Assembly (NCBI GenBank): GCA_030704615.1
Contig: CM060732.1
Span: 41,478,001 to 41,542,000 of the forward strand
Reading direction: 5' to 3'
Length of the DNA: 64,000 nucleotides
DNA from: Takakia lepidozioides
Lineage: Eukaryota > Plantae > Bryophyta
Positions 6,118-42,800 of this stretch are shown piece by piece. Both the position numbers and the translations under genes were made by a program. Within the stretch, counting starts at the first letter, position 1; each line of letters begins with the position of its first letter. Below the pieces are notes generated by a model. It did not search any database. It had not been told where the DNA came from and saw only the letters and a list, made by a program, of their open reading frames with translations.

Positions 6118-8678
6118 AGACTTTGCAGGGAGTGCAGTGCTCAACATGGTGCAGCTGCCAATGTCTGTGTGATGCGTTCTCAAAGAAAGATCTGCTACAG
6201 TATTGGGTATGCTCCACTTCCCCCTCTGGCATGAAGAATCTGAACACCACAGAAGCTGTCCAACCTTGTGCATTCATGCTGTTACCTGCGAAAAGGTGGG
6301 GACAGAATCTTGCATTGATCTTTGGGATGTTCATGATGCAGGGCAGTGGGGTTGCAAGTATGGAGGCAGACCCAGTTGTTTCTTGGGCATCCCAGTGGGG
6401 GCGCATGTGTGGGTCTTGGCACGTCCGCTGTTTTGAACGGAGTGAGAGAAACTAGAGCGAGGGAATGGAGCAAGAACAGGACGAACAGTTGGGGTACTGG
6501 TGGGAATATGGCTTCAGTGTGCGGCGAGGGACGCTTGAAGGAGGCGGTGCAGCTTTTGGATGTGATGGAGCAACGAGGCTTTTGGGCATATTCCGAGACC
6601 TGCGCTCGTCTCTTGCAGGGGTATGCAAAGACGAAGGCCCTCGCAGATGTGAAGGGGGTCCATGCCCACATCATCAAAAGTGGATTTGAGTCAAACATGT
6701 TCCTTGCAAACACCCTTGTCAGCATGTATTGCAAGTGCGGAAGCATTGGGGATGCGCGCCGAGTGTTTGACAAAATGCCTCAACGAAATGCGATTTCTTG
6801 GACTGCGATGATTGGAGGATTAGCTAAGCAAGGGCAGGGAGAAGCTGCATTTGAACTCTTTCGGCAAATGGAAAGAGAGGGCGTGAAGGCAGACAGGGTT
6901 ACTTTCATGAGCATTCTGAATGCATGTGCTGGGCCAGTAGATCTAGAACATGGCAAGCGGCTCCATGCGGGCATTATTACAGCTGGATTTGAGTCAGATG
7001 TGAGAGTGGGGAATGCCCTTGTCAGCATGTATTGCAAGTGCGGGAGTATGGCGGATGCGCGGCAAATGTTTGATAGGATGCCTAAGCGAGATGTGATCTC
7101 GTGGAATGCGATGATTGCAGGATGCGCTCAGCAGGGCCATGATGAGGAAGCCTTTGGACTCTTTGGGCAAATGCAAAGAGGCGGCGTGACGGCAGACAGA
7201 GTGACTTTCTTGAGCATTCTGAGCGCATGTTCGAGCCCAATGGCCCTGGAATCCGGCAGGCATCTCCATGTGTCTATCATGAAAGCTGGACTGGAGTCTG
7301 ATGTTGGAGTGGGGAATGCCCTCATCAGTATGTATTGCAAATGCGGTAGTGTGGTGGATGGCCGCCGGGTGTTTGACAGTCTGCGCGAACGAGATGTGGT
7401 CTCATGGACGGCGATGATTGCTGGATACTCTCAGCATGGTGATTGTGAGAAGTCTTTTGAACTCTTTCGGCAAATGCAAAGTGCTGGCGTGAAGCCCAAC
7501 GAGGTCGCTTTCATGAGCATCCTGAACGCATGCGCCAGTCTAGCAGCCCTAGAAGAGGGCAAGTGGATCCATGACCTCATCGTCAGATCAGGATTGGAGT
7601 CAGATGTTCGAGTTTCTAATGCTCTTGTCGACATGTATGCCAAGTGCGGGAGTGTGGGTGATGCACGACAAGTATTTGACAAAATTCCTCAACGGGACGT
7701 GGTCTCATGGAATACCATGGTTGTGGGATATGCCCAGAACGGGATTGGTAAGGAGGCCCTCCAACTCTTTGAACAAATGTTACACGAAGGAGTGAAGCCA
7801 GACTCTGTCACATTTGTTGGTGTTCTCTCTGCATGCAACAGTATGGGCCTGGTGGACAAAGGCCATAGTTACTTCCTCTCCATGAGTCATGATCATGGCA
7901 TCCCACCAACAGGAATGCACTATGGCTGCATGGTCGGCCTTCTTGGTCGATCAGGGCAATTACATGAGGCAGAGGACTTCATCAGCAAAATGCCGGTGGA
8001 GCCAAATGCTTCAGTGTGGGGGCCATTGCTTGGTGCATGCAGAATCTATGGTAATGTGGAGGTAGCAGAACGGGCTGCAGAACATATACTCAAATTCAAA
8101 CCACAAGATGCCGGAGTGTATGTGCTGCTTTCAAATGTCTATGGTGCGGCTGGCAGGTGGGATGATATAGCAAAGGTGAGAAAGGCCATGAAGGACAGGG
8201 GTGTGAAGAAGGAGCCAGGGCGTAGCTGGATCGAAGTCAAGAATAGGGTACATACGTTCGGTGTAGAAGATAGATCGCACCCGCAGACCGAGGAGATATA
8301 TGCTGCGTTGGAAAGATTGGATAGACAAATTAAGGAAGTGGGATATGTTCCTGATACACGCTTTGTGTTACATGATGTGGATCAGAAGATGAAGGAACAG
8401 GCTCTTGGCTATCATAGTGAAAAGCTGGCCATTGCGTTTGGGCTCATCAGCACGCCCCCTGGGACACCTATCCGCATAATTAAAAATCTCAGGGTATGTG
8501 GGGATTGCCACACTGCCAGCAAATTTATCTCCACAATTGTTGGGCGTGAGATCATAGCAAGGGATGCCAACCGCTTTCATCATTTCAAGAATGGGGTGTG
8601 TTCTTGTGGGGATTATTGGTGATGACAACTCCACACGCGCCAACACGATCTTCCATTTATGGAGTCTTAAGCGAATGT
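6118..8678 (+). repeat. Left arm of a 2561-bp near-perfect inverted repeat
   Basis: Position x pairs with 20161-x. The ORF track is mirrored (6346-8622 vs 11539-13815, and the shadow ORFs). Boundaries are AGACTTTGCAGGG and GCGAATGT. Confidence 0.97.
6346..8622 (+). CDS. PLS-E1-E2-DYW PPR protein (organellar C-to-U RNA editing factor, DYW:PG type), copy 1
   Basis: 14 motifs L-S-(P-L-S)x3-P2-L2-S2, then E1/E2, PG box PGRSWIE, HSEKLA and CGDCH zinc ligands, terminal DYW. The start is uncertain: the track start is GTG and the first in-frame ATG is at 6508. Confidence 0.96.
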   Translation: MGLQVWRQTQLFLGHPSGGACVGLGTSAVLNGVRETRAREWSKNRTNSWGTGGNMASVCGEGRLKEAVQLLDVMEQRGFWAYSETCARLLQGYAKTKALADVKGVHAHIIKSGFESNMFLANTLVSMYCKCGSIGDARRVFDKMPQRNAISWTAMIGGLAKQGQGEAAFELFRQMEREGVKADRVTFMSILNACAGPVDLEHGKRLHAGIITAGFESDVRVGNALVSMYCKCGSMADARQMFDRMPKRDVISWNAMIAGCAQQGHDEEAFGLFGQMQRGGVTADRVTFLSILSACSSPMALESGRHLHVSIMKAGLESDVGVGNALISMYCKCGSVVDGRRVFDSLRERDVVSWTAMIAGYSQHGDCEKSFELFRQMQSAGVKPNEVAFMSILNACASLAALEEGKWIHDLIVRSGLESDVRVSNALVDMYAKCGSVGDARQVFDKIPQRDVVSWNTMVVGYAQNGIGKEALQLFEQMLHEGVKPDSVTFVGVLSACNSMGLVDKGHSYFLSMSHDHGIPPTGMHYGCMVGLLGRSGQLHEAEDFISKMPVEPNASVWGPLLGACRIYGNVEVAERAAEHILKFKPQDAGVYVLLSNVYGAAGRWDDIAKVRKAMKDRGVKKEPGRSWIEVKNRVHTFGVEDRSHPQTEEIYAALERLDRQIKEVGYVPDTRFVLHDVDQKMKEQALGYHSEKLAIAFGLISTPPGTPIRIIKNLRVCGDCHTASKFISTIVGREIIARDANRFHHFKNGVCSCGDYW

Positions 8679-10290
8679 ACCAATCCACTAGCTTTGCAAC
8701 AGGGCAAACGCCTCCATGCAGACATTATCGAAGCCGGACTAGAGTCAGATATCGGAGTGGGAAATGCCATTATTACTATGTATTGCAAATGTGGTGAGTG
8801 TGCTGGATGCGCGGAGAGTGTTTGACAAAATGCCCAAGCGAGATGTGATCTCATGGAATGCAATGATCACGGGATTCGCCCAGCAAAGGCACAGTGAAGA
8901 GGCCTTTGAACTATTTAGGCCAATGCAACGTCGAGATGTAAGCACAGACAAGGTCACTTTCATAAGCATCCTGAATGCATGTGCCAGTCCAGGTGACCTG
9001 GAAGAGGGCAATCGGCTCCATGCGGCTGTGAGCAAAGCTGGATTGGAGTCGGATGTCCAAGTGGGGACTGCCCTAGTCAGAATGTATTGCAAGTGCGGAA
9101 ATGTGTCTGATGCGCGCAGAGTGTTCGACAAAATGCCTACGCGAGACCTTATCTCATGGAATGCCATGATCGCAGGATTAGCGCAGCAACGACATTGTGA
9201 GGAAAATGCAACAAGAAGGCCTCAAGGCAGGCAAGCTCACATTCCTAAGCATCCTCAATGCATGTGATGGCCCACTAGCTCTGGAACAGGGTAAATGGCT
9301 GCATGCTGGTATCATCAAAGCTGGATTGGAGTCAGATGTGCAGGTGGGCAATGCCCTCGTGACCATGTATTGCAAATGCGGGAGTTTAATGGCGCGTGCT
9401 GTGTTTGACAGAATGCCCAAGCGAAATGATATATCATGGAATGCTCTAATTGCAGGAGTAGCTCAGCAAGGGCATGGTGAAGAGGCAGTTGAACTCTTTT
9501 GGCAAATGCAAAGAGAAGGCATTCACCCTAATGAGGTCACTTTCATTAGTATCCTCAATGCATCCTCCAGCTTGGCAGCTCTAGAAGTGGGCAAGGAAGC
9601 TCATGCCCTCATCAGCAACTCTGGATTTGAGTCAGATGTCCGAGTGTGTAATGCCCTCATTGACATGTATGCCAAGTGTGGGAGTCTAGGAGGTGCTCGG
9701 AGAGCCTTTGACACAATGCCTCAAAGAGATGTGATCACTTGGAATTCAATGATAGTAGCATATGCTCGGCATGGGCTAGGTAAAGGGGCCCTCCACCTCT
9801 TTGAAGAGATGTTGTGGGAAGGGTGTAAGCCAGACAATGTCACGTCGTCAGTGTTCTTTCTGCATGCAGCCATATGGCCCTCGTGGAGGAAGGTAATCAC
9901 TACTTCCTCTCCATGAGAATAGATCATGGCATCACACCCATAGGTAAGCACTATGGCTGCATGGTTGATGTTCTAGGCCGTGCAGGCCACTTGGCTGATG
10001 CTGAGGACTTGATCAACAAAATGCCATTTGAGCCAGATGCTTCTGTCTGGGGGGCCTTGCTTGGCGCTTGCAAAATCCATGGCAACGTGGAGGTAGCAGA
10101 ACGTGCTGCAGAATGTATCCTCAAGATGGAACCTGAAATGCTGCAGTGTATGTGCTGCTTTCAAACATCTATGCTGCAGCTGGCCGGTGGGATGATATAA
10201 CAATGGTGAGGAAGGCAATGAACGATAGAGGTGTACAGAGTGACCTAGGGCACAATTGGATTGACGTCCAGAACAGGGTACATCTCATTC
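8679..10290 (+). pseudogene. PLS-E PPR pseudogene, 5'-truncated, about four frameshifts, ending in a decayed PG box with no DYW core
   Basis: Successive ORF pieces 8598-8825, 8764-9267, 9197-9916, 9874-10200 and 10146-10418 carry P/L/S/E motifs in shifting frames. Ends at LGHNWIDVQNRVH. Confidence 0.9.
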
Positions 10291-11482
10291 CAGTGCAGGT
10301 AACCTGTCACTCCCCAGCACCATTTAGAAGGAGGATGACAGGGAGACAAACTCACAAAATGTCCTTGGAGAACGGCGATCAGCAAGGAAATGTCAAGGCA
10401 GATACAGAAAACAGATGACATACTAGACCAGAGTGAACTTAGATACTGCATCATACCCTAGAGCATAGAGCATGTGCACAGCACACATTTAATCTGGGAG
10501 AAATTAGACAGCAGCACTGCTGGCACAGAACCCTTGCCAGACAGTTTCTGTAGCTAGTTTGTTTACCGACAATATTGGGTCCCAAGTAGTTACTTTCCTT
10601 TAGGCACCTGCTAAAGCCACATTTCTGTGAGGAAGTGCTATAACCATTTAGAGTTTGAATGTGTTGAAGGCACAGATTGTGCCACATACATCTAGTAGAT
10701 GAGATGAAGGTGTTTAGACAGATAAACATCAAATCACCATAGCAGAACATTCAATGACTTGTACTCACAGCCACAAAGATTCAGCCATCCGCAGTCACAA
10801 GATCATGGCACCAAGCAGACATCATACCATACATGATAAACCACTGAGTTGAAAACTTGAGACTTACATCAGGTTTTCCGAAAATAGCGAATGACAGAGC
10901 CCAGATCAAGTAACCAGCACATGATGAAGACTAAACCAAAGAGGAAATTGGGAAGTCAAAAGAGCACCTTCAACAATGTGCACAGTAGCAGATGGGCAGA
11001 TCAGACTGCGTTTTACTGAGATACGCACATGGGCACCATCCATTAAAGCGGTGCCCTTTGTTTTTTGCATCCGTGTGGCATACACTGCCTCAAGAGAGAT
11101 CCTCTGAACCCCAAGGAACTGCAATAAGACTGGTCACAATCTCAGAAAAACATCATTAATATGAAAGATACTCATTAATGTAGGATACTGTTGCAACTGA
11201 AAGCACCGAATGGAGAAGGTTGGAGAAGGGTTCATACCACTCAATGATGCCTTGACTTCAGCTCATTTATTTTCACCAATGACCTCTGCCAAAACCCTGC
11301 AAGCAACAGTTGTGGCCAGTTTACCAAACTGTGAATAGGACAATGCCCAACGCACAATCTGCAAGATTCATGGTTGCCTGTCACAAATGGGCATCAGATC
11401 AACGAGAAATATATGAGAGGTATAACCTCCTTGAATCTTGTGGCCATTAGACTCACCCTGAACAAGACCGACAGCTTGCCAG

Positions 11483-14043
11483 ACATTCGCTTAAGACTCC
11501 ATACACGGAAGATCGTGTTGGTGCGTGTGGAGTTGTCATCACCAATAATCCCCACAAGAACACACCCCATTCTTGAAATGATGAAAGCGGTTGGCATCCC
11601 TTGCTATGATCTCACACCCAACAATTGTGGAGATAAATTTGCTGGTAGTGTGGCAATCCCCACATACCCTGAGATTTTTAATTATGCAGATAGGTGTCCC
11701 AGGGGGCGTGCTGATGAGCCCAAACACAATGGCCAGCTTTTCACTATGATAGCCAAGAGCCTGTTCCTTCATCTTCTGATCCACATCATGTAACACAAAG
11801 CGTGTATTGGGAACATATCCCACTTCCTTAATTTGTCTATCCAATCTTTCCAACACAGCATATATCTCCTCGGTCTGCGGGTGCGATCTATCTTCTACAC
11901 CGAACGTATGTACCCTATTCTTGACTTCGATCCAGCTACGCCCTGGCTCCTTCTTCACACCCCTGTCCTTCATGGCCTTTCTCACCTTTGCTATATCATC
12001 CCACCTGCCAGCCGCACCATAGACATTTGAAAGCAGCACATACACTCCGGCATCTTGTGGTTTGAATTTGAGTATATGTTCTGCAGCCCGTTCTGCTACC
12101 TCCACATTACCATAGATTCTGCATGCACCAAGCAATGGCCCCCACACTGAAGCATTTGGCTCCACCGGCATTTTGCTGATGAAGTCCTCTGCCTCATGTA
12201 ATTGCCCTGATCGACCAAGAAGGCCGACCATGCAGCCATAGTGCATTCCTGTTGGTGGGATGCCATGATCATGACTCATGGAGAGGAAGTAACTATGGCC
12301 TTTGTCCACCAGGCCCATACTGTTGCATGCAGAGAGAACACCAACAAATGTGACAGAGTCTGGCTTCACTCCTTCGTGTAACATTTGTTCAAAGAGTTGG
12401 AGGGCCTCCTTACCAATCCCGTTCTGGGCATATCCCACAACCATGGTATTCCATGAGACCACGTCCCGTTGAGGAATTTTGTCAAATACTTGTCGTGCAT
12501 CACCCACACTCCCGCACTTGGCATACATGTCGACAAGAGCATTAGAAACTCGAACATCTGACTCCAATCCTGATCTGACGATGAGGTCATGGATCCACTT
12601 GCCCTCTTCTAGGGCTGCTAGACTGGCGCATGCGTTCAGGATGCTCATGAAAGCGACCTCGTTGGGCTTCACGCCAGCACTTTGCATTTGCCGAAAGAGT
12701 TCAAAAGACTTCTCACAATCACCATGCTGAGAGTATCCAGCAATCATCGCCGTCCATGAGACCACATCTCGTTCGCGCAGACTGTCAAACACCCGGCGGC
12801 CATCCACCACACTACCGCATTTGCAATACATACTGATGAGGGCATTCCCCACTCCAACATCAGACTCCAGTCCAGCTTTCATGATAGACACATGGAGATG
12901 CCTGCCGGATTCCAGGGCCATTGGGCTCGAACATGCGCTCAGAATGCTCAAGAAAGTCACTCTGTCTGCCGTCACGCCGCCTCTTTGCATTTGCCCAAAG
13001 AGTCCAAAGGCTTCCTCATCATGGCCCTGCTGAGCGCATCCTGCAATCATCGCATTCCACGAGATCACATCTCGCTTAGGCATCCTATCAAACATTTGCC
13101 GCGCATCCGCCATACTCCCGCACTTGCAATACATGCTGACAAGGGCATTCCCCACTCTCACGTCTGACTCAAATCCAGCTGTAATAATGCCCGCATGGAG
13201 CCGCTTGCCATGTTCTAGATCTACTGGCCCAGCACATGCATTCAGAATGCTCATGAAAGTAACCCTGTCTGCCTTCACGCCCTCTCTTTCCATTTGCCGA
13301 AAGAGTTCAAATGCAGCTTCTCCCTGCCCTTGCTTAGCTAATCCTCCAATCATCGCAGTCCAAGAAATCGCATTTCGTTGAGGCATTTTGTCAAACACTC
13401 GGCGCGCATCCCCAATGCTTCCGCACTTGCAATACATGCTGACAAGGGTGTTTGCAAGGAACATGTTTGACTCAAATCCACTTTTGATGATGTGGGCATG
13501 GACCCCCTTCACATCTGCGAGGGCCTTCGTCTTTGCATACCCCTGCAAGAGACGAGCGCAGGTCTCGGAATATGCCCAAAAGCCTCGTTGCTCCATCACA
13601 TCCAAAAGCTGCACCGCCTCCTTCAAGCGTCCCTCGCCGCACACTGAAGCCATATTCCCACCAGTACCCCAACTGTTCGTCCTGTTCTTGCTCCATTCCC
13701 TCGCTCTAGTTTCTCTCACTCCGTTCAAAACAGCGGACGTGCCAAGACCCACACATGCGCCCCCACTGGGATGCCCAAGAAACAACTGGGTCTGCCTCCA
13801 TACTTGCAACCCCACTGCCCTGCATCATGAACATCCCAAAGATCAATGCAAGATTCTGTCCCCACCTTTTCGCAGGTAACAGCATGAATGCACAAGGTTG
13901 GACAGCTTCTGTGGTGTTCAGATTCTTCATGCCAGAGGGGGAAGTGGAGCATACCCAATACTGTAGCAGATCTTTCTTTGAGAACGCATCACACAGACAT
14001 TGGCAGCTGCACCATGTTGAGCACTGCACTCCCTGCAAAGTCT
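11483..14043 (-). repeat. Right arm of the 2561-bp inverted repeat
   Basis: Reverse complement of 6118-8678 with about 11 substitutions seen. Confidence 0.97.
11539..13815 (-). CDS. PLS-E1-E2-DYW PPR protein, copy 2 (6 aa differences from copy 1, all in the DYW domain)
   Basis: 758-aa ORF identical to 6346-8622 except A>V, D>N, A>V, R>C, A>T, R>C after the PG box. HSE and CxxC are retained. Confidence 0.95.
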   Translation of the reverse strand: MGLQVWRQTQLFLGHPSGGACVGLGTSAVLNGVRETRAREWSKNRTNSWGTGGNMASVCGEGRLKEAVQLLDVMEQRGFWAYSETCARLLQGYAKTKALADVKGVHAHIIKSGFESNMFLANTLVSMYCKCGSIGDARRVFDKMPQRNAISWTAMIGGLAKQGQGEAAFELFRQMEREGVKADRVTFMSILNACAGPVDLEHGKRLHAGIITAGFESDVRVGNALVSMYCKCGSMADARQMFDRMPKRDVISWNAMIAGCAQQGHDEEAFGLFGQMQRGGVTADRVTFLSILSACSSPMALESGRHLHVSIMKAGLESDVGVGNALISMYCKCGSVVDGRRVFDSLRERDVVSWTAMIAGYSQHGDCEKSFELFRQMQSAGVKPNEVAFMSILNACASLAALEEGKWIHDLIVRSGLESDVRVSNALVDMYAKCGSVGDARQVFDKIPQRDVVSWNTMVVGYAQNGIGKEALQLFEQMLHEGVKPDSVTFVGVLSACNSMGLVDKGHSYFLSMSHDHGIPPTGMHYGCMVGLLGRSGQLHEAEDFISKMPVEPNASVWGPLLGACRIYGNVEVAERAAEHILKFKPQDAGVYVLLSNVYGAAGRWDDIAKVRKAMKDRGVKKEPGRSWIEVKNRVHTFGVEDRSHPQTEEIYAVLERLDRQIKEVGYVPNTRFVLHDVDQKMKEQALGYHSEKLAIVFGLISTPPGTPICIIKNLRVCGDCHTTSKFISTIVGCEIIARDANRFHHFKNGVCSCGDYW

Positions 14044-15067: not shown

Positions 15068-16879
15068 ATGGAGTCAGTTGTTCTGGATCATAGTGGCAGC
15101 AAGGTTTTTGCTCTTGGCACGGCCACGATCACCACTACTTCTAATGGAGAGGGAGGAGAGCAACAAAAGGGAGTGGGAAGTGGCGAGGAGTCTTATGGTT
15201 CCAGCAGGGAGTTGAGCACACTCTGTCGGGAGGGACGATTGAAGGAGGCGGTGAAATTTTTGGACACTATGGATCAAGGAGACATTCGAGCATACTCTGA
15301 CGCCTATGCTTCTATCTTGCAGGGTTGTGCTAAGATGAAAGCTTTGGAAGATGGAAAGCAGGTCCATGCCCACATCATTAGGAGTGGATATGGCTCAGAC
15401 TTTTCTCTTGGAAACACACTTGTTAGCATGTATTCCAAGTGCGGAAGTATTTTGGATGCACGGCAAGTGTTTGACAATATGTCTGAACGAAATGTGATAT
15501 CGTGGACAGCAATGATTTCTGGATATGCTCAGGAAGGGTATGGCAAGGAGGCATTTGAACTTTTTAAGGAGATGCAACGAGCAGGGGTAAACCCTGACAA
15601 GGTTACCTTCATCAGCATCCTCAATGCATGTACAGTCCCTGCAGCTCTTCAACAGGGAAAGCAGGTTCATGCTCAGATTATCAATGCTGGGTTTGAGTCA
15701 GATGTGCATCTAGGGAATGCCATTGTCACCATGTATGCTAGGTGTGGGGATGTTACGAGTGCGCAGCAAGTGTTTGACAAGATGCCCGAACGAGATGTGG
15801 TTTCGTGGACTACCCTTGTTAACATGTATTGCAAGTGCGGGAACCTGGTGAATGCACGCCAAGTGTTTGATGAAATGCCAAAACGAGACGTGGTCTCGTG
15901 GACTGCAATGATTGCTGGATATGCTCAGCAAGGGCACAGTGAGATGGCATTCCAACTTTTTCGGCAAATGCAACAAGAAGGTGTGAGGCCTGACAAGGTC
16001 ACTTTTCTTAGCATCCTCAATGCATGTGCTAGCCCAGGAGCTCTGCAACAGGGCAAGCAGGTCCACGGCCACATCATCAACGCTAGATTTGAGTCAGACG
16101 TTCGGCTAGGAAATGCCCTTGTCAGCATGTATGCCAAATGCGGCAGTGTAGATAGTGCACGTCGGGTGTTTGACAAAATGTTTAAACGAGATGTGGTCTC
16201 ATGGACTGCTCTTGTTGACATGTATTGCAAGTGCGGGAGTGTGAAGGATGCGCGACAAGTGTTTGACCAAATGCCCAAACGAGATGTGGTGTCATGGAAT
16301 GCTATGATTTCAGGTTATGCTCAGCGGGGTCATGGTGAAGAGGTTTTTGAACTTGTTCAGCAAATGCATGGAGAAGGATTGAAACCCGATAGTGTAACCT
16401 TCATTGGCATCCTCAATGCATGTTCAAGCCAAGCAGCCCTTGAAGAGGGAAAGCGAGTTCATGGCCGGATCATTGAATCTGGATTTGAATCAGATGTCTC
16501 TGTGGGAAATGCCCTTGTTGACATGTATTCAAAGTGCAGGAGTGTAGTCGATGCAAGGCAAGTCTTCGATAGAATTCCTAAGCGAGATGTGGTGTCCTGG
16601 AATGCAATGATTACAGGATACACCCAGAATGGATATGGCACAGAGGCTCTCCAACTCTTCAAACAGATGCAATGGGAAGATGTTAAGCCAGACAATATCA
16701 CATTCATTGGTGTTCTCACCGCATGCAGCCAGTTGGGCCTGGTGGATGAGGCCCGTCAATACTTCCGGTCTATGAGTCAAGACCATGGGATTACGCCAAC
16801 ATGGAAGCACCATGGCTACATGGCACAACTAGTTGGCCCTTCAGGTTGCTTGGAGGAGGTTGACACATTGTTGACCTGA
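15068..16879 (+). CDS. PLS-type PPR protein lacking E and DYW domains
   Basis: Intact 603-aa ORF of P/L/S motifs including doubled S (SS) motifs. Ends in a degenerate S2 (ITPTWKHHGYMAQLVGPSGCLEEV). Confidence 0.92.
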   Translation: MESVVLDHSGSKVFALGTATITTTSNGEGGEQQKGVGSGEESYGSSRELSTLCREGRLKEAVKFLDTMDQGDIRAYSDAYASILQGCAKMKALEDGKQVHAHIIRSGYGSDFSLGNTLVSMYSKCGSILDARQVFDNMSERNVISWTAMISGYAQEGYGKEAFELFKEMQRAGVNPDKVTFISILNACTVPAALQQGKQVHAQIINAGFESDVHLGNAIVTMYARCGDVTSAQQVFDKMPERDVVSWTTLVNMYCKCGNLVNARQVFDEMPKRDVVSWTAMIAGYAQQGHSEMAFQLFRQMQQEGVRPDKVTFLSILNACASPGALQQGKQVHGHIINARFESDVRLGNALVSMYAKCGSVDSARRVFDKMFKRDVVSWTALVDMYCKCGSVKDARQVFDQMPKRDVVSWNAMISGYAQRGHGEEVFELVQQMHGEGLKPDSVTFIGILNACSSQAALEEGKRVHGRIIESGFESDVSVGNALVDMYSKCRSVVDARQVFDRIPKRDVVSWNAMITGYTQNGYGTEALQLFKQMQWEDVKPDNITFIGVLTACSQLGLVDEARQYFRSMSQDHGITPTWKHHGYMAQLVGPSGCLEEVDTLLT

Positions 16880-17760: not shown

Positions 17761-20700
17761 ATGAATGCACTGGTACTGCAGGCACCACCTAGTAAGTTCC
17801 TCAACCCTCTCTCAAAATGTCATGTCCGCTTGCCTGCAGAGAGAATTCTGTCAGTTCCTGTTGCCAGCAATGCCTTCTCTCTCTCCGTCTCTCTGTCTTC
17901 TTCAGCTTTCGCTGGAGTGAACATTCCCGCCCGTTGTAGCATTATAAGCTCCAGTACCCACTTAATATCAAATTCGTCGACAAGCCCATCTGTCAGATCT
18001 TTGAAACTTTCAGATTTTTGCAGCTCCATCCTCTTCATAAACTCTCGTACGATTCCTGTCAGTGAACCAAGCTTCCTCAATGATATTTCGAGTCATTCTT
18101 CACGGAAAGGGTCGCACAATAACATCGGTCTCGTCGGGGAGCCGCTTGCTCCAAAGACAACGCGTCAATACTCTGAAAGACTCACTCTGTTTCAACCATC
18201 ATTTCTCTCCAGGAAACTCACCTGGCTAAACCCTATTCGGTGTTCTCACCATAACAACCCCTCTCTCTCATCAATGGCTGCCATGCCTTCAGTTTCTACA
18301 ATAAATGAGCTACCTTCAGCAGCTGCGACGGCGACAACACAGGACGCTTCCACGGGTGGTTCTCAAACAGAAGTGCTGGTGCAGTACATAGTAGTACGAA
18401 AGGATTTGATGGACACAATGAAATGGCCACTGGGGAGCGTGATTTCTCAAGGCTGTCATGCTGCCGTTGCAGCAATTTGGCTGCACAAGGAGGATCCAGA
18501 TACTGCCCAGTACTGTGGGCTTGAGAATCTAGACAACATGCACAAGGTTTGTGATTTATTCTTTTCCTTTTGCTGCTACTCTTGGTTTGTCTGGACACCA
18601 AGCATGCATTCAATCAGAGCCTCTTATATCTGATACTCTTCCTGACATTCTCTTCTTCTTTGTGAAGGTGATAATCTGGTATACATGGTTTCTGAATGGT
18701 GTAACTGGATGATGGGATATTGTAATACCACAGCTATTACCAGCTGGGCTATACCATGTTGATAACTGTTGATTTTTCCGAGGTGTTGAGATTTTGACCC
18801 AATATTTAGAACCGACTGGTATCACTCTTAAAATGTTGAAAATCCAAATACTTAGATTTGGCGGGTACGTTATACAGGGCATAATTGTGAGTATAGGCCC
18901 TCAATATAAGAGATGCAAGAATCTTTATGGTTCTTTCAGCACTTGTTCATTCTTTCTGTCTCTCTCTCTTGTATGGACCCTTGGCGCCTCCTGTGGCCTC
19001 TTTTCTCTTGTTCCGTTTTCACTTCCAAGGAACCGCCAGTCAGAACAGATTGCATGAACTAAAAACCCTAGGCAACCAAGTGCCAACAAGAGCAGCCCAA
19101 TACGGCTGTTTCAGCACACGTATTAAACCTGTGCAACCAAGACAAGTAAGCCTTTGAGCCAAGTTAGCATGTCAACCGATCTGCTAAACAAATCCACACA
19201 GCAGTCATTTTGGGGAGGGGTATTGCACCCAACACTACTTGTACATAGAATATGCCAAGGAGATGTGCGGTTAGAAGCGTGTGGGTAATTTTGAACCACA
19301 GTGATTTTCTGTCAGCATCTACCAAATGGACAAAAACGTTTTTTGGCCAACACATGGCGTTGCTCAGATTGTACTCATAAGACGTTGTTTGCCGTAGCCT
19401 TGTGGCCATTGACCCCACGCCCAGTTTGAGCGGGAACAAAAGGGACAGAACCTACCTCTGTCAGGGGCTGACGTTGGTAGTAAGACTTACCTCCATATAA
19501 AGAATTAATCCGGGTTTTCCAGATATCCTCTAGAAATCCCTTCACACAAGCATCAATCTGCTGTGTGTGATTTGCCCAAAAACTAGGCCTCAGGAGGGCC
19601 TGGGCTTTTGGCTCAGCCTCGAGACTTTCAAAGTTGGTAAACAGGGGTACAGGCACAATTCCCGTAATAGATTTGAAGAGAGCGTCTCTTTGGTGAGAGA
19701 ACCCCGGACAGTGTATCAGAAAATGAATACTGTCTTCAGATTGCCCACACAACGGGCAATTGCACTCTCCCTTTCCTCTCTGCTTCTGTTTGCTGTTCAA
19801 AGGTAGGCTTCCAGCCCTGAGTTTAAATTTCAGTCTAGTGCCGAGAGTGGGTAGACCCTTGAGGTCATCCAAGATGTCCTCCCCCATGTCACAGACTGGA
19901 AACAAGTTCAGGGAAGTTTTCTGCCTAACTTCATTTTCATCAGACAATCTCATGGCAACAGACATGGCTGAGGACACTACAGCCTCTAAGTCAGATTTAT
20001 CCAGCAGGGTCAAGACTTGCGGATCCAGGTCCAGGTCCTTGAGGATCTCTTCTACTCTCTTCTGCCAGGACTCGGCCTGTTTGACAGGGCGGTCCTGTTT
20101 CCAAGATATAGAGTCGATTAATTTAGGATATCTGGTGTTGGGCATATGTTGCAGCTGACCCCACCATCTGACCTTGAATTGCTCAGAGAGCAACATGTTC
20201 CAGTAACTCTTTTGTCCAGAGAAGGAGCCAAGGCCTCCCAGTCTTTCAAGCAGCTTTACTTGCCCTGCCTCATTGCTAAGTCCCATGGAATGATATGGTA
20301 GCATAACACAGGCTGTCTAATAATATCAGATAAACTTCTGGGTGAACCGTCTTTACCCCAAGCATGGCCCACATATCTGAACCAATTTCTTCTTACTTAG
20401 CCTTGTGTTGCCCGTCTAAAGGAGGGAAGCCAAGCCAGTGACCTTGAGCAGAGAGCAATGAGGGTGCACCTTCTGCCTTGAAACTTGCCACTAAGGAAAG
20501 TTGGGTCCTGAGGTATGACGTTTGAATTTGGCAAGCAAGAATAGCCTGAACCTGAGGGTCCACAATGCTGAGACGTCCTTCAAATGTCATTATGTGACCA
20601 CATCGTAAGCCACCTGGGTATAAACTATCTTGCTGAGCTGTCTTGTTTGGGGGACCATGCGATGGTCTGATTGTGGAGCAGAGAGTGGCATGTAATTGCT

Positions 20701-39800: not shown

Positions 39801-42800
39801 GGCTGCTTGGGATGCAAACATTCTTACTTCCCATCGTCGCTTGGGAAACTCAAGCCTAACTCTGGAGAGTTTTTCTGATGGTGAGGGGCTTGACTTTACT
39901 TACATCTCAATTCTTCTCCCAGTGTGTGAGAATGTTCTCTATTTCTCTTTTCTGTGGGGAGGTACTGAGAAGTACGAATGATGGGTATGTGTGAGGAAGA
40001 ACAGAACTTGCATAACAGCCGATGGAGAAGTACTTCATAACAAGCAAAAGTACTAGACGTAGGGGAGGTGGCCTACCTGTTGCAATAATCTATGCCAGCG
40101 ATCCAGGGAGAGAAACTTAATCGAAATGAAATGGTACTGTAAAGATTGTACTCATAAGACGTTGTTTGCCGTAGCCTTGTGGCCATTGACCCCGCGCCCA
40201 GTTTGAGCGGGAACAAAAGGGACAGAACCTACCTCTGTCAGGGGCTGACGTTGGTAGTAAGACTTACCTCCATATATAGAATTAATCCGGGTTTTCCCGA
40301 TATCCTCTAGAGAAAGAAAAAAAAAAGAAGGCATTGCAAGAAAGAAAAGTAGACAAAATTTATAATATCCACTGAAAAAGATAGAGATGGTTGTGTATCT
40401 GTGTCTGCCTACATGTGCATGTTAGATAGCAATGGATCTCTTCTTCACAAGTGCCACAAATACCTTTTGACAGGAAGGAAGCATGAGGTGGAACTAGAAC
40501 TGGAAGGCATGGGTGGGGGAGGGATTGTTCAACTCGAGGTAATCTGATATCTGATGGTCCCATGGATCTTTGGGCATCCTTTGGAGTCATTGATGTGGTC
40601 TTTACCGTTGTTGTAGTTTGTACCTTGCAAAACATCCTCTGGTGGAATGGTATAAGATGTTTTCCTTCTTTCCTTCCTTCCTTCCGTCCTTCCTTTCCTT
40701 TCTAAAGAATACCAATGTTGGCTGAGGCCTTGAGCTTTGACAACCAGTAGTGCTGGGCAGCTTACCTTAATTAGGCACTTTCTCTCCATGTGATGTTTGG
40801 TCTAATTTGGTGTGGGTTTTCTTTTTTGCTTGGGGCCCTCTGTGGATGTTACTGTGAGATCAGGGGCAGATACCACTGTCTCTTTAGATACTCTCCCCGT
40901 CTTTGGCAGTTGCCATCAGCTTTCAGAATCAGAGGTGCTTTGCATCTCACCCATGCATGAGTCACTTCATCTCCAATGGGCCCTCTAGGCTCCCTGTGCA
41001 TGTAAGGTATTTAATTTTGTGGTTATCTCTCTCCTTCTCGTATGGTCTAGTGGGCCAAAGTCCATTTGTGTCTGTGGCTGTCAGGTTCAATACAGAAGCT
41101 TCTCCGAGCTGGACTCAGAGCAAGTCTGGTGGCATCTGCCATTTCTTACAGAGCTTTTCCAGGTCAAAGGTCTGAAGGGGGCCTTTAAGACAGTATTTGG
41201 CACAGAAGGTATCAGGGCAGGTGATTTTGTAAGGTCTGCTCTGGGTTCTATACAATTCTTAGATCAAGAAAAGGCGAGTACAGCACCAACAAATTCAGCA
41301 GACTCCCAGGATAGGGTGGAAAAACCTCAGGACAGGAACTCGAGCTTTCTCCCAGGACAGACCTTCCAAGGAGGGGTGAAGCCTGCTACAGGACAATCTG
41401 CCTTTGAAGAAAGAGGTAGCAATATTAGAAATATCTTGGGAAATATCCAAAGTGACCAGAAAGCAGAACTTGAAGTTAGGGAAAGTGATGGTCAAAACAG
41501 CAGGTCAATTTCACTAAGTGAAGCAACTACAAAATCCTCAGAGGGGTTTGGCATAGAAAGAGCTAAGCCAAAGAACACCAATGGGGGACCTGTTCAAGAG
41601 GGAGAGGGAGACAAGGAGGGCGACTACATTAGTAGTGTGATCAAGGCTGTTAGCCTGGTTTTGGGGTCTTTGGGCGTGGATACTGCTGACGTCCCCTCCA
41701 TAGATTGGGCTATATGGCAGACGAATCAGGAAGCAACTAAGAAGCTGGGTTATGAGTCCCAGAATAGGGCTGAGGCAGAGTACATTGAGAGTGGGCTAGC
41801 ACTACGAAATGAACAAGACGAGTCCACATCCACTCGGGATCCCCTTGAAGTTAGTGCTCCTTCCAAATTTTCACTTGCTGGTTTGGCAGGATATTCATGC
41901 ATGGGCTCAGATGAAAGTATTTGCAATAAAATGAATGTGAATTTTGTCTTCTCTATAACTGGAACTTGTGATAACTATGAGGTTCTCTTGTTGGAATGTA
42001 CGATTACTTGAGCTTACGGGTAAAGCACCTCCCATGGCACATTGATCAAACACAGTCTTGAAGACTTCAGTTCTCTTTTTGAGTTGCAGGTTCAGTGTCT
42101 GAAAGATTTACATGATTGTAGTAGACAGTGGTCTGTAATCATATAAACTAGTCCCCCGCTTATGTGGTTTTTCGTATTGAAATGGGCTTCTATCTTTCTG
42201 CAGACATTCTAAAGTACCATTCTTCCCCCCCATCCCGTCCCCTTCCAGTTGCAGGATTGTATAGGCAGGGTCTATGACTGTTGGAGTTTATAAGAATATT
42301 TCTTGTGTATGTGGGTCTTCCTCTCTTTTGTACCTTGGTCCCTTTGTGCCTCCTTGGATGTAGATTATTTATTGTTCATTTCTTGCTCTTGGATGTAGTT
42401 TTTGGGCTGCTTGTGGAGGTTCCCTCTCTCTTTCTTGTTTCATGTTAACATATTGTGTCTGTAGGTCTTGGGCCCCTCAACAGAGGACTTGAAGCAAGCA
42501 TCTCAAAACTTGTTGAAGTACACGGAGGAGTTTTTGGGCTCATTGGCAATGGTGGCCACAGCCTTTGCAAGATCTCAAAAAGCAGAGGGTGCAGAGGGTT
42601 CGGTTAAAACTGGCATTCCTAAGGATCTTGCAACACCAGAAGAACCGAACAAGAAGACAAACAGTAAAGATAAGGTTTTGGAAGCGTTGGAAAGAGAGGG
42701 CAGTGATGATCAGGAGAGAGACGTAACCCGACAGATGTTTCAGACTGCCGAGAGTGCAGTTGAAGCTTGGGCTGTGCTGGCAACTTCCCTGGGGGGTCAA

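What the first reader, a model, noticed from the sequence alone, without database searches (positions are those of the whole stretch)
8306..8657. Divergence between the twin genes is confined to the deaminase domain and 3' end and is almost all CpG/CHG decay
Seen: 10 differences in ~350 bp (8306, 8352, 8353, 8435, 8473, 8515, 8545, 8639, 8655, 8657) versus one spotted (6999, synonymous) in the other ~2.2 kb. Nine of the 11 are transitions at CpG (CCTGAT vs CCCAAT implies ancestral CCCGAT mutated on each side), one is at CHG and one is a transversion. All six amino-acid changes move copy 2 away from the DYW consensus. Inference: methylation-driven mutation targeted to the DYW region and/or gene conversion homogenising the PPR array. 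The result is a pair with identical RNA specificity but possibly unequal catalytic activity, such as a competitor or tuner of editing.
Basis: partly seen in the sequence, partly recalled or inferred. Interest (0 to 1): 0.8.

Follow-up and report, generated by a model that had tools for sequence, protein, structure and literature searches.

The report
Twin RNA-editing genes, differences at one end
Two mirror-image copies of a plant organelle RNA-editing gene are identical except for a 373-base stretch at their tail ends, where one copy has lost methylation-prone CG sites and conserved enzyme residues; this looks like ordinary duplicate-gene evolution, not a new mechanism.

Summary
The arms 6118-8678 (+) and 11483-14043 (-) align without gaps and differ at precisely the 11 listed positions. 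Ten of these lie in the last 373 bp. Nine are CpG transitions, one is a CHG transition and one is a transversion.

The clustering is far beyond chance and is not explained by CpG density: 1 of 80 CpG dinucleotides was hit in the first 2.19 kb, against 7 of 13 in the last 373 bp (p = 1.4e-6).

Both genes are intact PLS-E-DYW editing factors with identical PPR arrays. Copy 2 carries six replacements. Five of them abandon strongly conserved DYW residues; the sixth is at a variable column. Copy 1's own changes are all silent.

The block starts about 100 nt inside the DYW domain and runs into the 3' UTR, so it follows position in the repeat, not the domain.

Best reading (about 0.5): a real, young tail-to-tail duplication with two age strata. 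Arm-to-arm gene conversion recently reset the outer 2.19 kb. The loop-side 373 bp escaped and shows ordinary methyl-CpG decay, with relaxed constraint on the daughter copy 2.

A local CG-methylation hot spot is not excluded (about 0.2). Hairpin-driven, all-context methylation fits poorly. Interest is moderate to low.

The parts
6118..8678 (+). Arm 1 of the inverted duplication (copy 1, inferred parental locus)
   Evidence: 2561-nt ungapped match to arm 2 with 11 differences. Its last 21 nt continue in frame into the downstream PPR pseudogene only on this side.
11483..14043 (-). Arm 2 of the inverted duplication (copy 2, inferred daughter copy)
   Evidence: No target-site duplication or terminal inverted repeats at its ends. 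Contig depth over the arms is about twice that over the spacer in an independent DNA sample.
6346..8622 (+). Copy 1 open reading frame: PLS-PPR array, E motifs and a DYW deaminase ending in GDYW
   Evidence: Pfam hits to PPR families, E_motif, Eplus_motif and DYW_deaminase (148.8 bits). HSE and CGDCH motifs are intact. The first in-frame ATG is at 6508, but homology to Ginkgo N-termini runs back to 6346, so the true 5' end is unresolved.
11539..13815 (-). Copy 2 open reading frame: same length, with six replacements between codons 654 and 734
   Evidence: (DYW_deaminase 143.3 bits).
8306..8678 (+). Divergent block in copy 1: rear of the DYW domain plus 56 nt after the stop codon. Holds 10 of the 11 differences.
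11483..11855 (-). The same block in copy 2. Carries 7 of the 9 CpG-loss or CHG-loss states found in the block, including all six replacements.
6999..6999 (+). The only difference outside the block (T in copy 1, C in copy 2; synonymous; at a CpG)
   Evidence: Both letters are also present in DNA sample S1 and in run X5.
8679..11482 (.). 2804-nt spacer between the arms
   Evidence: Contig depth is about single-copy in S1. No contigs of the probable RNA run X5 lie on 10200-11399.
8658..10418 (+). Frame-shifted, 5'-truncated PPR-E pseudogene without a DYW domain. It starts inside the last 21 nt of arm 1.
   Evidence: ORF pieces in three frames. About 75% DNA identity to the twin gene.

Best explanation
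This is a real, evolutionarily young tail-to-tail inverted duplication of one intact PLS-E-DYW organelle RNA-editing gene in a seed-free plant. The differences are ordinary deamination transitions at CG-methylated cytosines.

The differences sit only in the loop-side 373 bp because the arms have two ages. Arm-to-arm gene conversion, or an equivalent re-copying, recently reset the outer 2.19 kb. The inner 373 bp escaped and keeps an older divergence.

Copy 1 sits in the original context and stays under purifying selection; all its changes are silent. Copy 2 is the daughter. Its deaminase end evolves without constraint and has lost five conserved residues, while the zinc and catalytic ligands remain.

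Shown: the structure, the pattern, its significance, the consensus polarity and the asymmetry between copies.

Inferred: conversion as the cause of the step, methylation as the cause of the CpG bias, and reduced activity of copy 2.
For: 1. The step is sharp and independent of CpG density: 1/80 against 7/13 CpG dinucleotides hit, with 7 untouched CpGs in the 85 nt before 8306.

2. Both non-CpG differences also lie in the block (2/347 against 0/2028 sites, p = 0.021). The likelihood ratio is 6-37 for 'older stratum' over 'CpG-only hot spot'.

3. Selection cannot explain the clean 2.19 kb. About a quarter of possible CpG transitions are synonymous, yet only one is seen among 80 CpGs.

4. CpG observed/expected is 0.58 in the clean part and 0.57 in the block. 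The ancestral value for the block is higher (13 CpGs rather than 11), so there is no long-term local hot spot.

5. A neighbouring 817-bp inverted pair (519-1332 against 19366-20180) has comparable divergence. It shows 6 CpG transitions against 8 other changes, and its per-site CpG rate is about 17 times the non-CpG rate. CpG hypermutability is therefore general in this region.

6. The duplication is real in independent data. Arm contigs have about twice the depth of spacer contigs in runs X1 and X2. The T/C pair at 6999 and the CA allele at 8352/8353 are present in sample S1. The TG and CG alleles are present in X5.

7. Polarity and relaxed constraint. Copy 1 has the consensus residue at D670, A697, R710, A724 and R734 (71-97% of 225-232 homologues, and the consensus PPR-DYW protein of PDB entry 9kfx). 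Copy 1 has 0 nonsynonymous and 2 synonymous changes; copy 2 has 6 nonsynonymous and 0 synonymous (Fisher p = 0.036).

8. The shared 3' flank ends inside a PPR motif that continues only on copy 1's side.
Against: - The block is richer in CpG changes than a simple older stratum predicts. The ratio of CpG to other changes is 9:2 against 6:8 in the control pair (p = 0.10). The per-site CpG/non-CpG rate ratio is about 55 against about 17.
- One of the two non-CpG differences is at CHG. The other is 2 nt from a CpG change and may belong to the same event.
- There is no raised divergence at the outer arm edge.
- The sample S1 contig 8151-8451 reads C at 8306, CA at 8352/8353 and C at 8435 at roughly two-copy depth. 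That could mean some of copy 2's changes are very recent, but bubble-popping in the contigs can mimic it.
- No orthologue closer than 57% (whole protein) or 78% (DYW end) was found, so there is no tree-based test of conversion.
Confidence: 0.5

Rival explanations
1. Local CG-methylation hot spot. The whole duplication is uniformly young. The last roughly 370 bp of the arms are CG-methylated while the rest is not, for example through 3'-end methylation from convergent transcription or proximity to the centre of the repeat. Deamination then hits only that stretch.
For: More than half of the block's CpG dinucleotides are hit, while only 2 of 347 other sites differ. That is a more CpG-biased spectrum than in the control repeat. 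Three alleles (CG, TG, CA) exist at one CpG within the species. The S1 contig lacks copy 2's T at 8306 and 8435, as expected if those changes are recent.
Against: Both non-CpG differences also lie in the block (p = 0.021). CpG observed/expected is not lower in the block. The change is CG-only (CHG 1/20, CHH 0/127). In the known tail-to-tail PAI1-PAI4 case, methylation covers the whole shared sequence and includes non-CG sites (PMC3203196). The probable RNA run X5 has no contigs on 10200-11399, so no fold-back transcript is seen. No methylation data were available.
Confidence: 0.2
2. Assembly or polishing artefact. Some or all of the differences are consensus errors at methylated CpGs or mis-polishing between near-identical copies.
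For: The differences are nearly all at CpG. Copy 2's T at 8306 and 8435, and the states at 8473-8545, were not independently seen in the contigs shown. The assembly differs from S1 at several spacer positions.
Against: There is no indel between the arms in 2561 nt, which is unlike error-prone consensus. Both letters at 6999, the CA and TG alleles at 8352/8353 and copy 1's states at 8639/8655/8657 are confirmed in other samples. Arm-to-spacer depth is about 2:1. Errors would not be expected to stop sharply at 8306.
Confidence: 0.05
3. Adaptive divergence. Copy 2's six replacements were favoured by selection for an altered deaminase, such as a regulator or competitor with the same RNA address.
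For: Copy 2 has six nonsynonymous and no synonymous changes. Its reading frame and catalytic ligands are intact, and its PPR array is unchanged.
Against: 12 of the 16 possible CpG transitions in this stretch are nonsynonymous, so 6 out of 6 has P = 0.18 under no selection. All six replacements sit at mutable CpG or CHG sites. Five replace residues conserved in 71-97% of homologues with rare ones. The equivalents of R710 and D670 matter for solubility and for the active conformation in OTP86 (PMC7611903).
Confidence: 0.05

Closest known systems
Arm-to-arm gene conversion in inverted repeats and palindromes (sex-chromosome palindromes, plastid inverted repeats, inverted plant gene pairs); general knowledge, not checked in a paper here
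   Same: Two inverted copies kept almost identical over kilobases. A sharp border separates an identical tract from a more diverged one.
   Different: Conversion is inferred here from the pattern alone. Only the inner edge is diverged, and no tree or population test was possible.
PAI1-PAI4 tail-to-tail inverted gene duplication of Arabidopsis Ws (PMC3203196 and works cited there)
   Same: A tail-to-tail inverted duplication of a whole endogenous gene. That arrangement can trigger cytosine methylation through read-through fold-back RNA.
   Different: PAI methylation covers all the shared sequence and includes non-CG sites. Here the mutational trace is CG-only and limited to 15% of the repeat. 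There is a 2.8-kb spacer, and no transcript across it was seen.
PLS-E-DYW RNA-editing factors (PPR56/PPR65 of Physcomitrium, OTP86; consensus PPR-DYW structure 9kfx, PMC13324415; OTP86 DYW structure, PMC7611903)
   Same: Same architecture. Copy 1 matches the designed consensus DYW at five of the six variable columns. The HSE and CxDCH motifs and the C-terminal zinc ligands are present in both copies.
   Different: Copy 2 carries D670N, A697V, R710C, A724T and R734C. The OTP86 equivalent of R710 (R912) gave a poorly soluble, weakly active Ala mutant. The equivalent of D670 (D872) hydrogen-bonds to R895 in the active state. No target site or activity is known for either copy.
Methyl-CpG decay and asymmetric relaxation of young gene duplicates (general knowledge)
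   Same: The differences are dominated by CpG transitions. The daughter copy accumulates replacements while the parent accumulates only silent changes.
   Different: The decay is restricted to one end of an otherwise identical pair.

Membership tests
PLS-class PPR-DYW RNA-editing factor | Array of P, L and S pentatricopeptide motifs | tested here: met
   Pfam PPR, PPR_1, PPR_2 and PPR_3 hits, E-values 1e-35 to 1e-85, in both copies. 303-nt triplet periodicity.
PLS-class PPR-DYW RNA-editing factor | E motifs followed by a DYW deaminase domain with HxE and CxxC zinc/catalytic motifs and a terminal DYW | tested here: met
   E_motif, Eplus_motif and DYW_deaminase hits. HSE, CGDCH, CSC and GDYW are present in both copies. 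The DYW end aligns full length to 9kfx, with matching letters at about 80% of positions.
PLS-class PPR-DYW RNA-editing factor | Organelle targeting peptide and a complete 5' end | tested here: inconclusive
   There is no in-frame ATG before codon 55, yet homology to Ginkgo N-termini reaches codon 2. A candidate ATG at 6231, with a GT at 6296 and an AG at 6341, would join in frame, but the implied intron is only 46 nt. The joined model was not searched.
PLS-class PPR-DYW RNA-editing factor | C-to-U editing of a defined organelle site | not testable with these tools
   No organelle transcript data or assay was available.
Gene conversion between duplicate arms | Tract of near-identity with a sharp border against a more diverged tract, not explained by mutability or selection | tested here: met
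   1/80 against 7/13 CpG dinucleotides hit. 0/2028 against 2/347 non-CpG sites differ. 7 untouched CpGs lie just before the border.
Gene conversion between duplicate arms | Copies within a genome more alike than orthologues between lineages, or alleles shared between copies in a population | tested here: inconclusive
   No close orthologue was found. Contigs of other samples show the same alleles at 6999 and 8352/8353 and a mosaic contig, but contigs cannot phase variants to copies.
Inverted-repeat-triggered (PAI-like, small-RNA-directed) methylation | Tail-to-tail inverted repeat of a transcribed gene | tested here: met
   Probable RNA contigs cover copy 1.
Inverted-repeat-triggered (PAI-like, small-RNA-directed) methylation | Read-through transcript across the centre giving fold-back RNA | tested here: not met
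   Run X5 (probably RNA) has depth 0 on 10200-11399. This is one sample, contigs only, and therefore weak evidence.
Inverted-repeat-triggered (PAI-like, small-RNA-directed) methylation | Methylation in all cytosine contexts, coextensive with the shared sequence | tested here: not met
   Tested only through the mutational trace. The changes are CG 8/26, CHG 1/20 and CHH 0/127, and only in the last 373 of 2561 nt. Methylation itself was not measured.
Repeat-induced point mutation (fungal RIP-like) | C-to-T transitions spread over the whole duplicated length in both copies | tested here: not met
   Ten of the 11 differences lie in 15% of the repeat. The organism is a plant.

The most novel reading that the evidence does not exclude
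The centre of a tail-to-tail gene palindrome acquires local CG methylation. This selectively erodes the catalytic domain of one twin while conversion keeps the RNA-reading array perfect. The result is a natural 'same address, weaker enzyme' partner that competes with or tunes the intact editing factor at its organelle target.
Probability: 0.1. Interest if true: 0.6.

Novelty: new member of a known kind. Interest (0 to 1): 0.3.

Why it matters
The pair is a clean natural example of mosaic evolution inside a duplicated editing-factor gene. The two proteins have identical RNA-reading arrays and differ only by six residues in and just before the deaminase domain.

It offers a ready-made comparison for bacterial or in-plant editing assays of conserved DYW residues: R734, R710, A724, A697 and D670. 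It is also a small test case for separating gene conversion from local methylation-driven mutation in a seed-free plant with hundreds of such genes.

It does not by itself reveal a new mechanism.

Tried and rejected
- Outgroup for polarity. Whole-protein and DYW-end searches found nothing closer than 57% and 78% identity. Polarity therefore rests on the CpG logic, the family consensus and one allele seen in run X5.
- Transposon capture of copy 2. There is no target-site duplication and there are no terminal inverted repeats. The spacer is at single-copy depth. The high-depth bins at 8400-8599 and 10000-10199 reflect conserved DYW and E motifs shared by paralogues, not a transposon.
- One large 20-kb palindrome. 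The outer pair 519-1332 / 19366-20180 has a different centre, and nothing between it and the twins is homologous. It served only as a control for the mutation spectrum.
- Patchwork conversion from other DYW paralogues. The differences are isolated single CpG changes, not clusters of paralogue-like changes.
- Purifying selection as the cause of the clean 2.19 kb. Rejected because synonymous CpG sites are clean as well.
- Positive selection on copy 2. Six out of six nonsynonymous has P = 0.18.
- Deciding from sample S1 whether its two copies are identical in 8151-8451. The contig depths (0.89 and 1.10 of two-copy depth) do not discriminate, and contigs can pop variant bubbles.
- Earlier notes of the scan. 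Searching for CpG or conversion patterns in other duplicates of this genome found nothing relevant.
Full report
**What is there**

The window holds a cluster of PPR genes. Two stretches, 6118-8678 on the plus strand and 11483-14043 on the minus strand, are inverted copies of each other. They are 2561 nt long, align without gaps, and are separated by a 2804-nt spacer. Homology ends abruptly at all four ends.

Each arm carries a 758-codon open frame: 6346-8622 (+) and 13815-11539 (-). Pfam finds PPR motifs, E and E+ motifs and a DYW deaminase domain in both. The genes are tail to tail.

Protein searches place the sequence in a seed-free or early-diverging land plant whose own proteins are not in the database. 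The best matches are 55-57% identical and come from Ginkgo, Cryptomeria, mosses and a clubmoss. Earlier notes of the scan call it a moss-type genome. I did not verify the species.

**The observation**

- Nine are transitions at a CpG retained in one copy. This includes 6999 and the double case at 8352/8353, where copy 1 reads TG and copy 2 reads CA.
- Position 8515 is a transition at CHG on the opposite strand.
- Position 8657 is a T/G transversion.

Ten of the eleven lie in 8306-8678. The chance of that is 4e-8 for the given stretch, and it did not occur once in 200,000 permutations for any stretch of that size.

CpG density does not explain it. Using the CpG-restoring ancestor, 80 CpG dinucleotides precede 8306 and one is hit. 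Thirteen follow and seven are hit (p = 1.4e-6). Seven untouched CpGs lie at 8221-8289, directly before the first hit.

Within the block, 8 of 26 CG cytosines changed, 1 of 20 CHG cytosines and 0 of 127 CHH cytosines.

**Where the block lies**

The block starts at codon 654. That is about 100 nt after the PG box that opens the DYW domain in the current definition, and 35 nt before the shorter Pfam domain. It runs through the stop codon: three differences lie in the 56 nt of shared 3' flank.

The block is therefore the loop-side end of the repeat, not the deaminase domain as such.

**Polarity and consequences for the proteins**

I aligned both copies with 240 homologues. Copy 1 holds the majority residue at five of the six variable columns:

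| Column | Copy 1 residue | Frequency among homologues | Copy 2 residue | Frequency among homologues |
|---|---|---|---|---|
| 670 | D | 71% | N | 16% |
| 697 | A | 87% | V | 3.6% |
| 710 | R | 81% | C | 2.2% |
| 724 | A | 87% | T | 0.4% |
| 734 | R | 97% | C | 0.4% |

The sixth column (654) is variable, and V is no rarer there than A. The designed consensus PPR-DYW protein of PDB entry 9kfx agrees with copy 1 at the same five columns.

The catalytic HSE motif, the CxDCH motif and the C-terminal zinc ligands are unchanged in both copies.

By alignment to OTP86, R710 corresponds to R912, whose alanine mutant was poorly soluble and weakly active. D670 corresponds to D872, which hydrogen-bonds to R895 in the active conformation (PMC7611903). 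None of the six positions is among the interface residues listed for the consensus structure (PMC13324415).

With this polarity, copy 2 carries six replacements and one change after the stop codon. Copy 1 carries two synonymous changes and one after the stop codon. In the coding sequence that is 0 nonsynonymous to 2 synonymous for copy 1, against 6 to 0 for copy 2 (p = 0.036).

Twelve of the sixteen possible CpG transitions in this stretch are nonsynonymous, so six out of six is unremarkable without selection (P = 0.18). Copy 2's deaminase end therefore looks unconstrained, not adapted.

**Which copy is the original**

The last 21 nt of the shared 3' flank encode the start of a PPR helix. On copy 1's side only, this continues into a frame-shifted, 5'-truncated PPR-E pseudogene at 8658-10418. 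Copy 1 is therefore in the older context, and copy 2 is the inserted daughter. No target-site duplication or terminal inverted repeats flank copy 2.

**Independent data**

Public runs labelled as the same organism were available only as contigs.

- In DNA sample S1 (runs X1, X2), contigs on the arms have about twice the depth of contigs on the spacer (57-63 against 22-35, and 89-105 against 43-57). The duplication therefore exists outside this assembly.
- Both letters at 6999 occur in S1 and in X5.
- At 8352/8353, S1 shows CA. X5 shows both TG and the inferred ancestral CG.
- X5 and X6 contigs cross the arm end at 8678 on copy 1's side. The X5 contig matches copy 1 exactly over 8626-8846, including 8639, 8655 and 8657. 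The X6 contig (8626-8835) differs at one undisplayed position.

These points argue against an assembly artefact, at least for those sites.

In the S1 contig 8151-8451, positions 8306 and 8435 read C, not copy 2's T. Its depth (0.89 and 1.10 of two-copy depth) does not show whether both S1 copies are identical there or whether variant bubbles were collapsed.

X5 is probably RNA. It has no contigs on the non-genic spacer 10200-11399 but covers the genes. It gives no sign of a transcript running from copy 1 through the spacer into copy 2.

**Mechanism**

Two explanations compete for the step at 8306. Either the arms have two ages, or they have two mutation rates.

Evidence for two ages (conversion or re-copying of the outer 2.19 kb):

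- Both non-CpG differences also fall in the block (2/347 against 0/2028, p = 0.021).
- Given the roughly 49-fold contrast at CpG sites, that placement is 6 to 37 times more likely under two ages than under a CpG-only hot spot. The range depends on whether the CHG change is counted as independent of methylation.
- CpG observed/expected is the same in both parts (0.58 and 0.57), and the ancestral value for the block is higher. The block was therefore not a long-standing decay hot spot.
- The neighbouring 817-bp inverted pair shows that CpG sites in this region mutate about 17 times faster per site than other sites anyway.

Evidence for two rates:

- The block's spectrum is more CpG-biased than the control's (9:2 against 6:8, p = 0.10).
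- One CpG has three alleles within the species.
- S1 may lack two of copy 2's changes.

The specific idea that the inverted repeat itself drives methylation through fold-back RNA, as at PAI1-PAI4, fits poorly. There, methylation covers the whole shared sequence and includes non-CG sites (PMC3203196). Here the trace is CG-only, confined to 15% of the repeat, and no bridging transcript is seen.

I put conversion plus ordinary CpG decay at about 0.5, a local CG-methylation hot spot at about 0.2, and artefact and adaptive divergence at about 0.05 each. The remainder is unassigned.

**Gene model**

There is no in-frame ATG before codon 55 (position 6508). Yet similarity to the N-terminal, pre-PPR part of Ginkgo proteins runs back to codon 2. 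A stop codon lies just upstream, so the true start is probably in a small upstream exon, as other notes report for this genome.

One candidate lies inside the arms: an ATG at 6231, a GT at 6296 and an AG at 6341, which join in frame. The implied intron is only 46 nt, so this is a lead, not a model.

Only 113 nt upstream of that ATG are duplicated, so copy 2 may lack the promoter.

**Comparison with what is known, and verdict**

Both genes are members of the PLS-E-DYW editing-factor family by every sequence feature tested. Targeting and activity are untested.

All three parts of the divergence pattern are known kinds of event: near-identity kept over kilobases between inverted copies, CpG-dominated differences, and asymmetric relaxation of the daughter copy. 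What stands out is how cleanly they combine here. The two proteins have the same RNA-reading array and differ only in and just before the deaminase domain, which makes a convenient natural experiment.

The competitor/tuner idea remains speculation. Interest is moderate to low.

Noticed in passing
window:8658-10418: A frame-shifted, 5'-truncated PPR-E pseudogene fills the left part of the spacer. It has pieces in three reading frames, lacks a DYW domain and is about 75% identical to the twin gene. It starts 36 nt after copy 1's stop codon.
   Followed up: partly
window:519-1332 and 19366-20180 (third partial copy at 40143-40311): A second inverted pair, 97.7% identical, with 14 mismatches (6 CpG transitions, 1 other transition, 7 transversions) and 2 indels. 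Its centre differs from that of the twins. The ORFs on it (554-1111 on the plus strand, 19375-20304 on the minus strand) have no Pfam match. I used it as the mutation-spectrum control.
   Followed up: partly
window:6341-7652, seen in run X5: The probable RNA run X5 carries a version of the gene's 5' part that differs from the window by 4.5% over 6341-6789, mostly by transversions, and by 1.4-1.9% over 7099-7652. It is identical or nearly so over 7965-8180, 8151-8434 and 8626-8846. DNA sample S1 lacks that version. This could be a mosaic allele, an ectopic conversion from a paralogue, or a paralogue private to that accession.
   Followed up: no
window:6231-6345: A candidate first exon lies inside the arms. 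An ATG at 6231, a GT at 6296 and an AG at 6341 would join in frame to the main ORF, but the implied intron is only 46 nt. An X5 contig starts at 6341. Similarity to Ginkgo N-termini reaches codon 2 of the ORF.
   Followed up: partly
window:3019-4761 (-) and 15068-16879 (+): Two further intact PPR ORFs flank the twins. One is a 580-aa P-type protein. The other is a 603-aa PLS-like protein with no E or DYW match.
   Followed up: partly
window:33633-34844 (-): A 403-aa ORF with a partial DDE_1 endonuclease (transposase) domain, E = 1.3e-12.
   Followed up: no
window:17761-18633 (+): A 290-aa ORF with a partial peptidyl-tRNA hydrolase PTH2 match, E = 1.7e-8.
   Followed up: no
window:9286, 9305, 10975 and other spacer positions: DNA sample S1, and X6 at 10975, differ from the assembly at several single-copy spacer positions, including small indels near 11389-11422. 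The public reads therefore come from a different genotype than the assembly, or the assembly has a few errors there.
   Followed up: no
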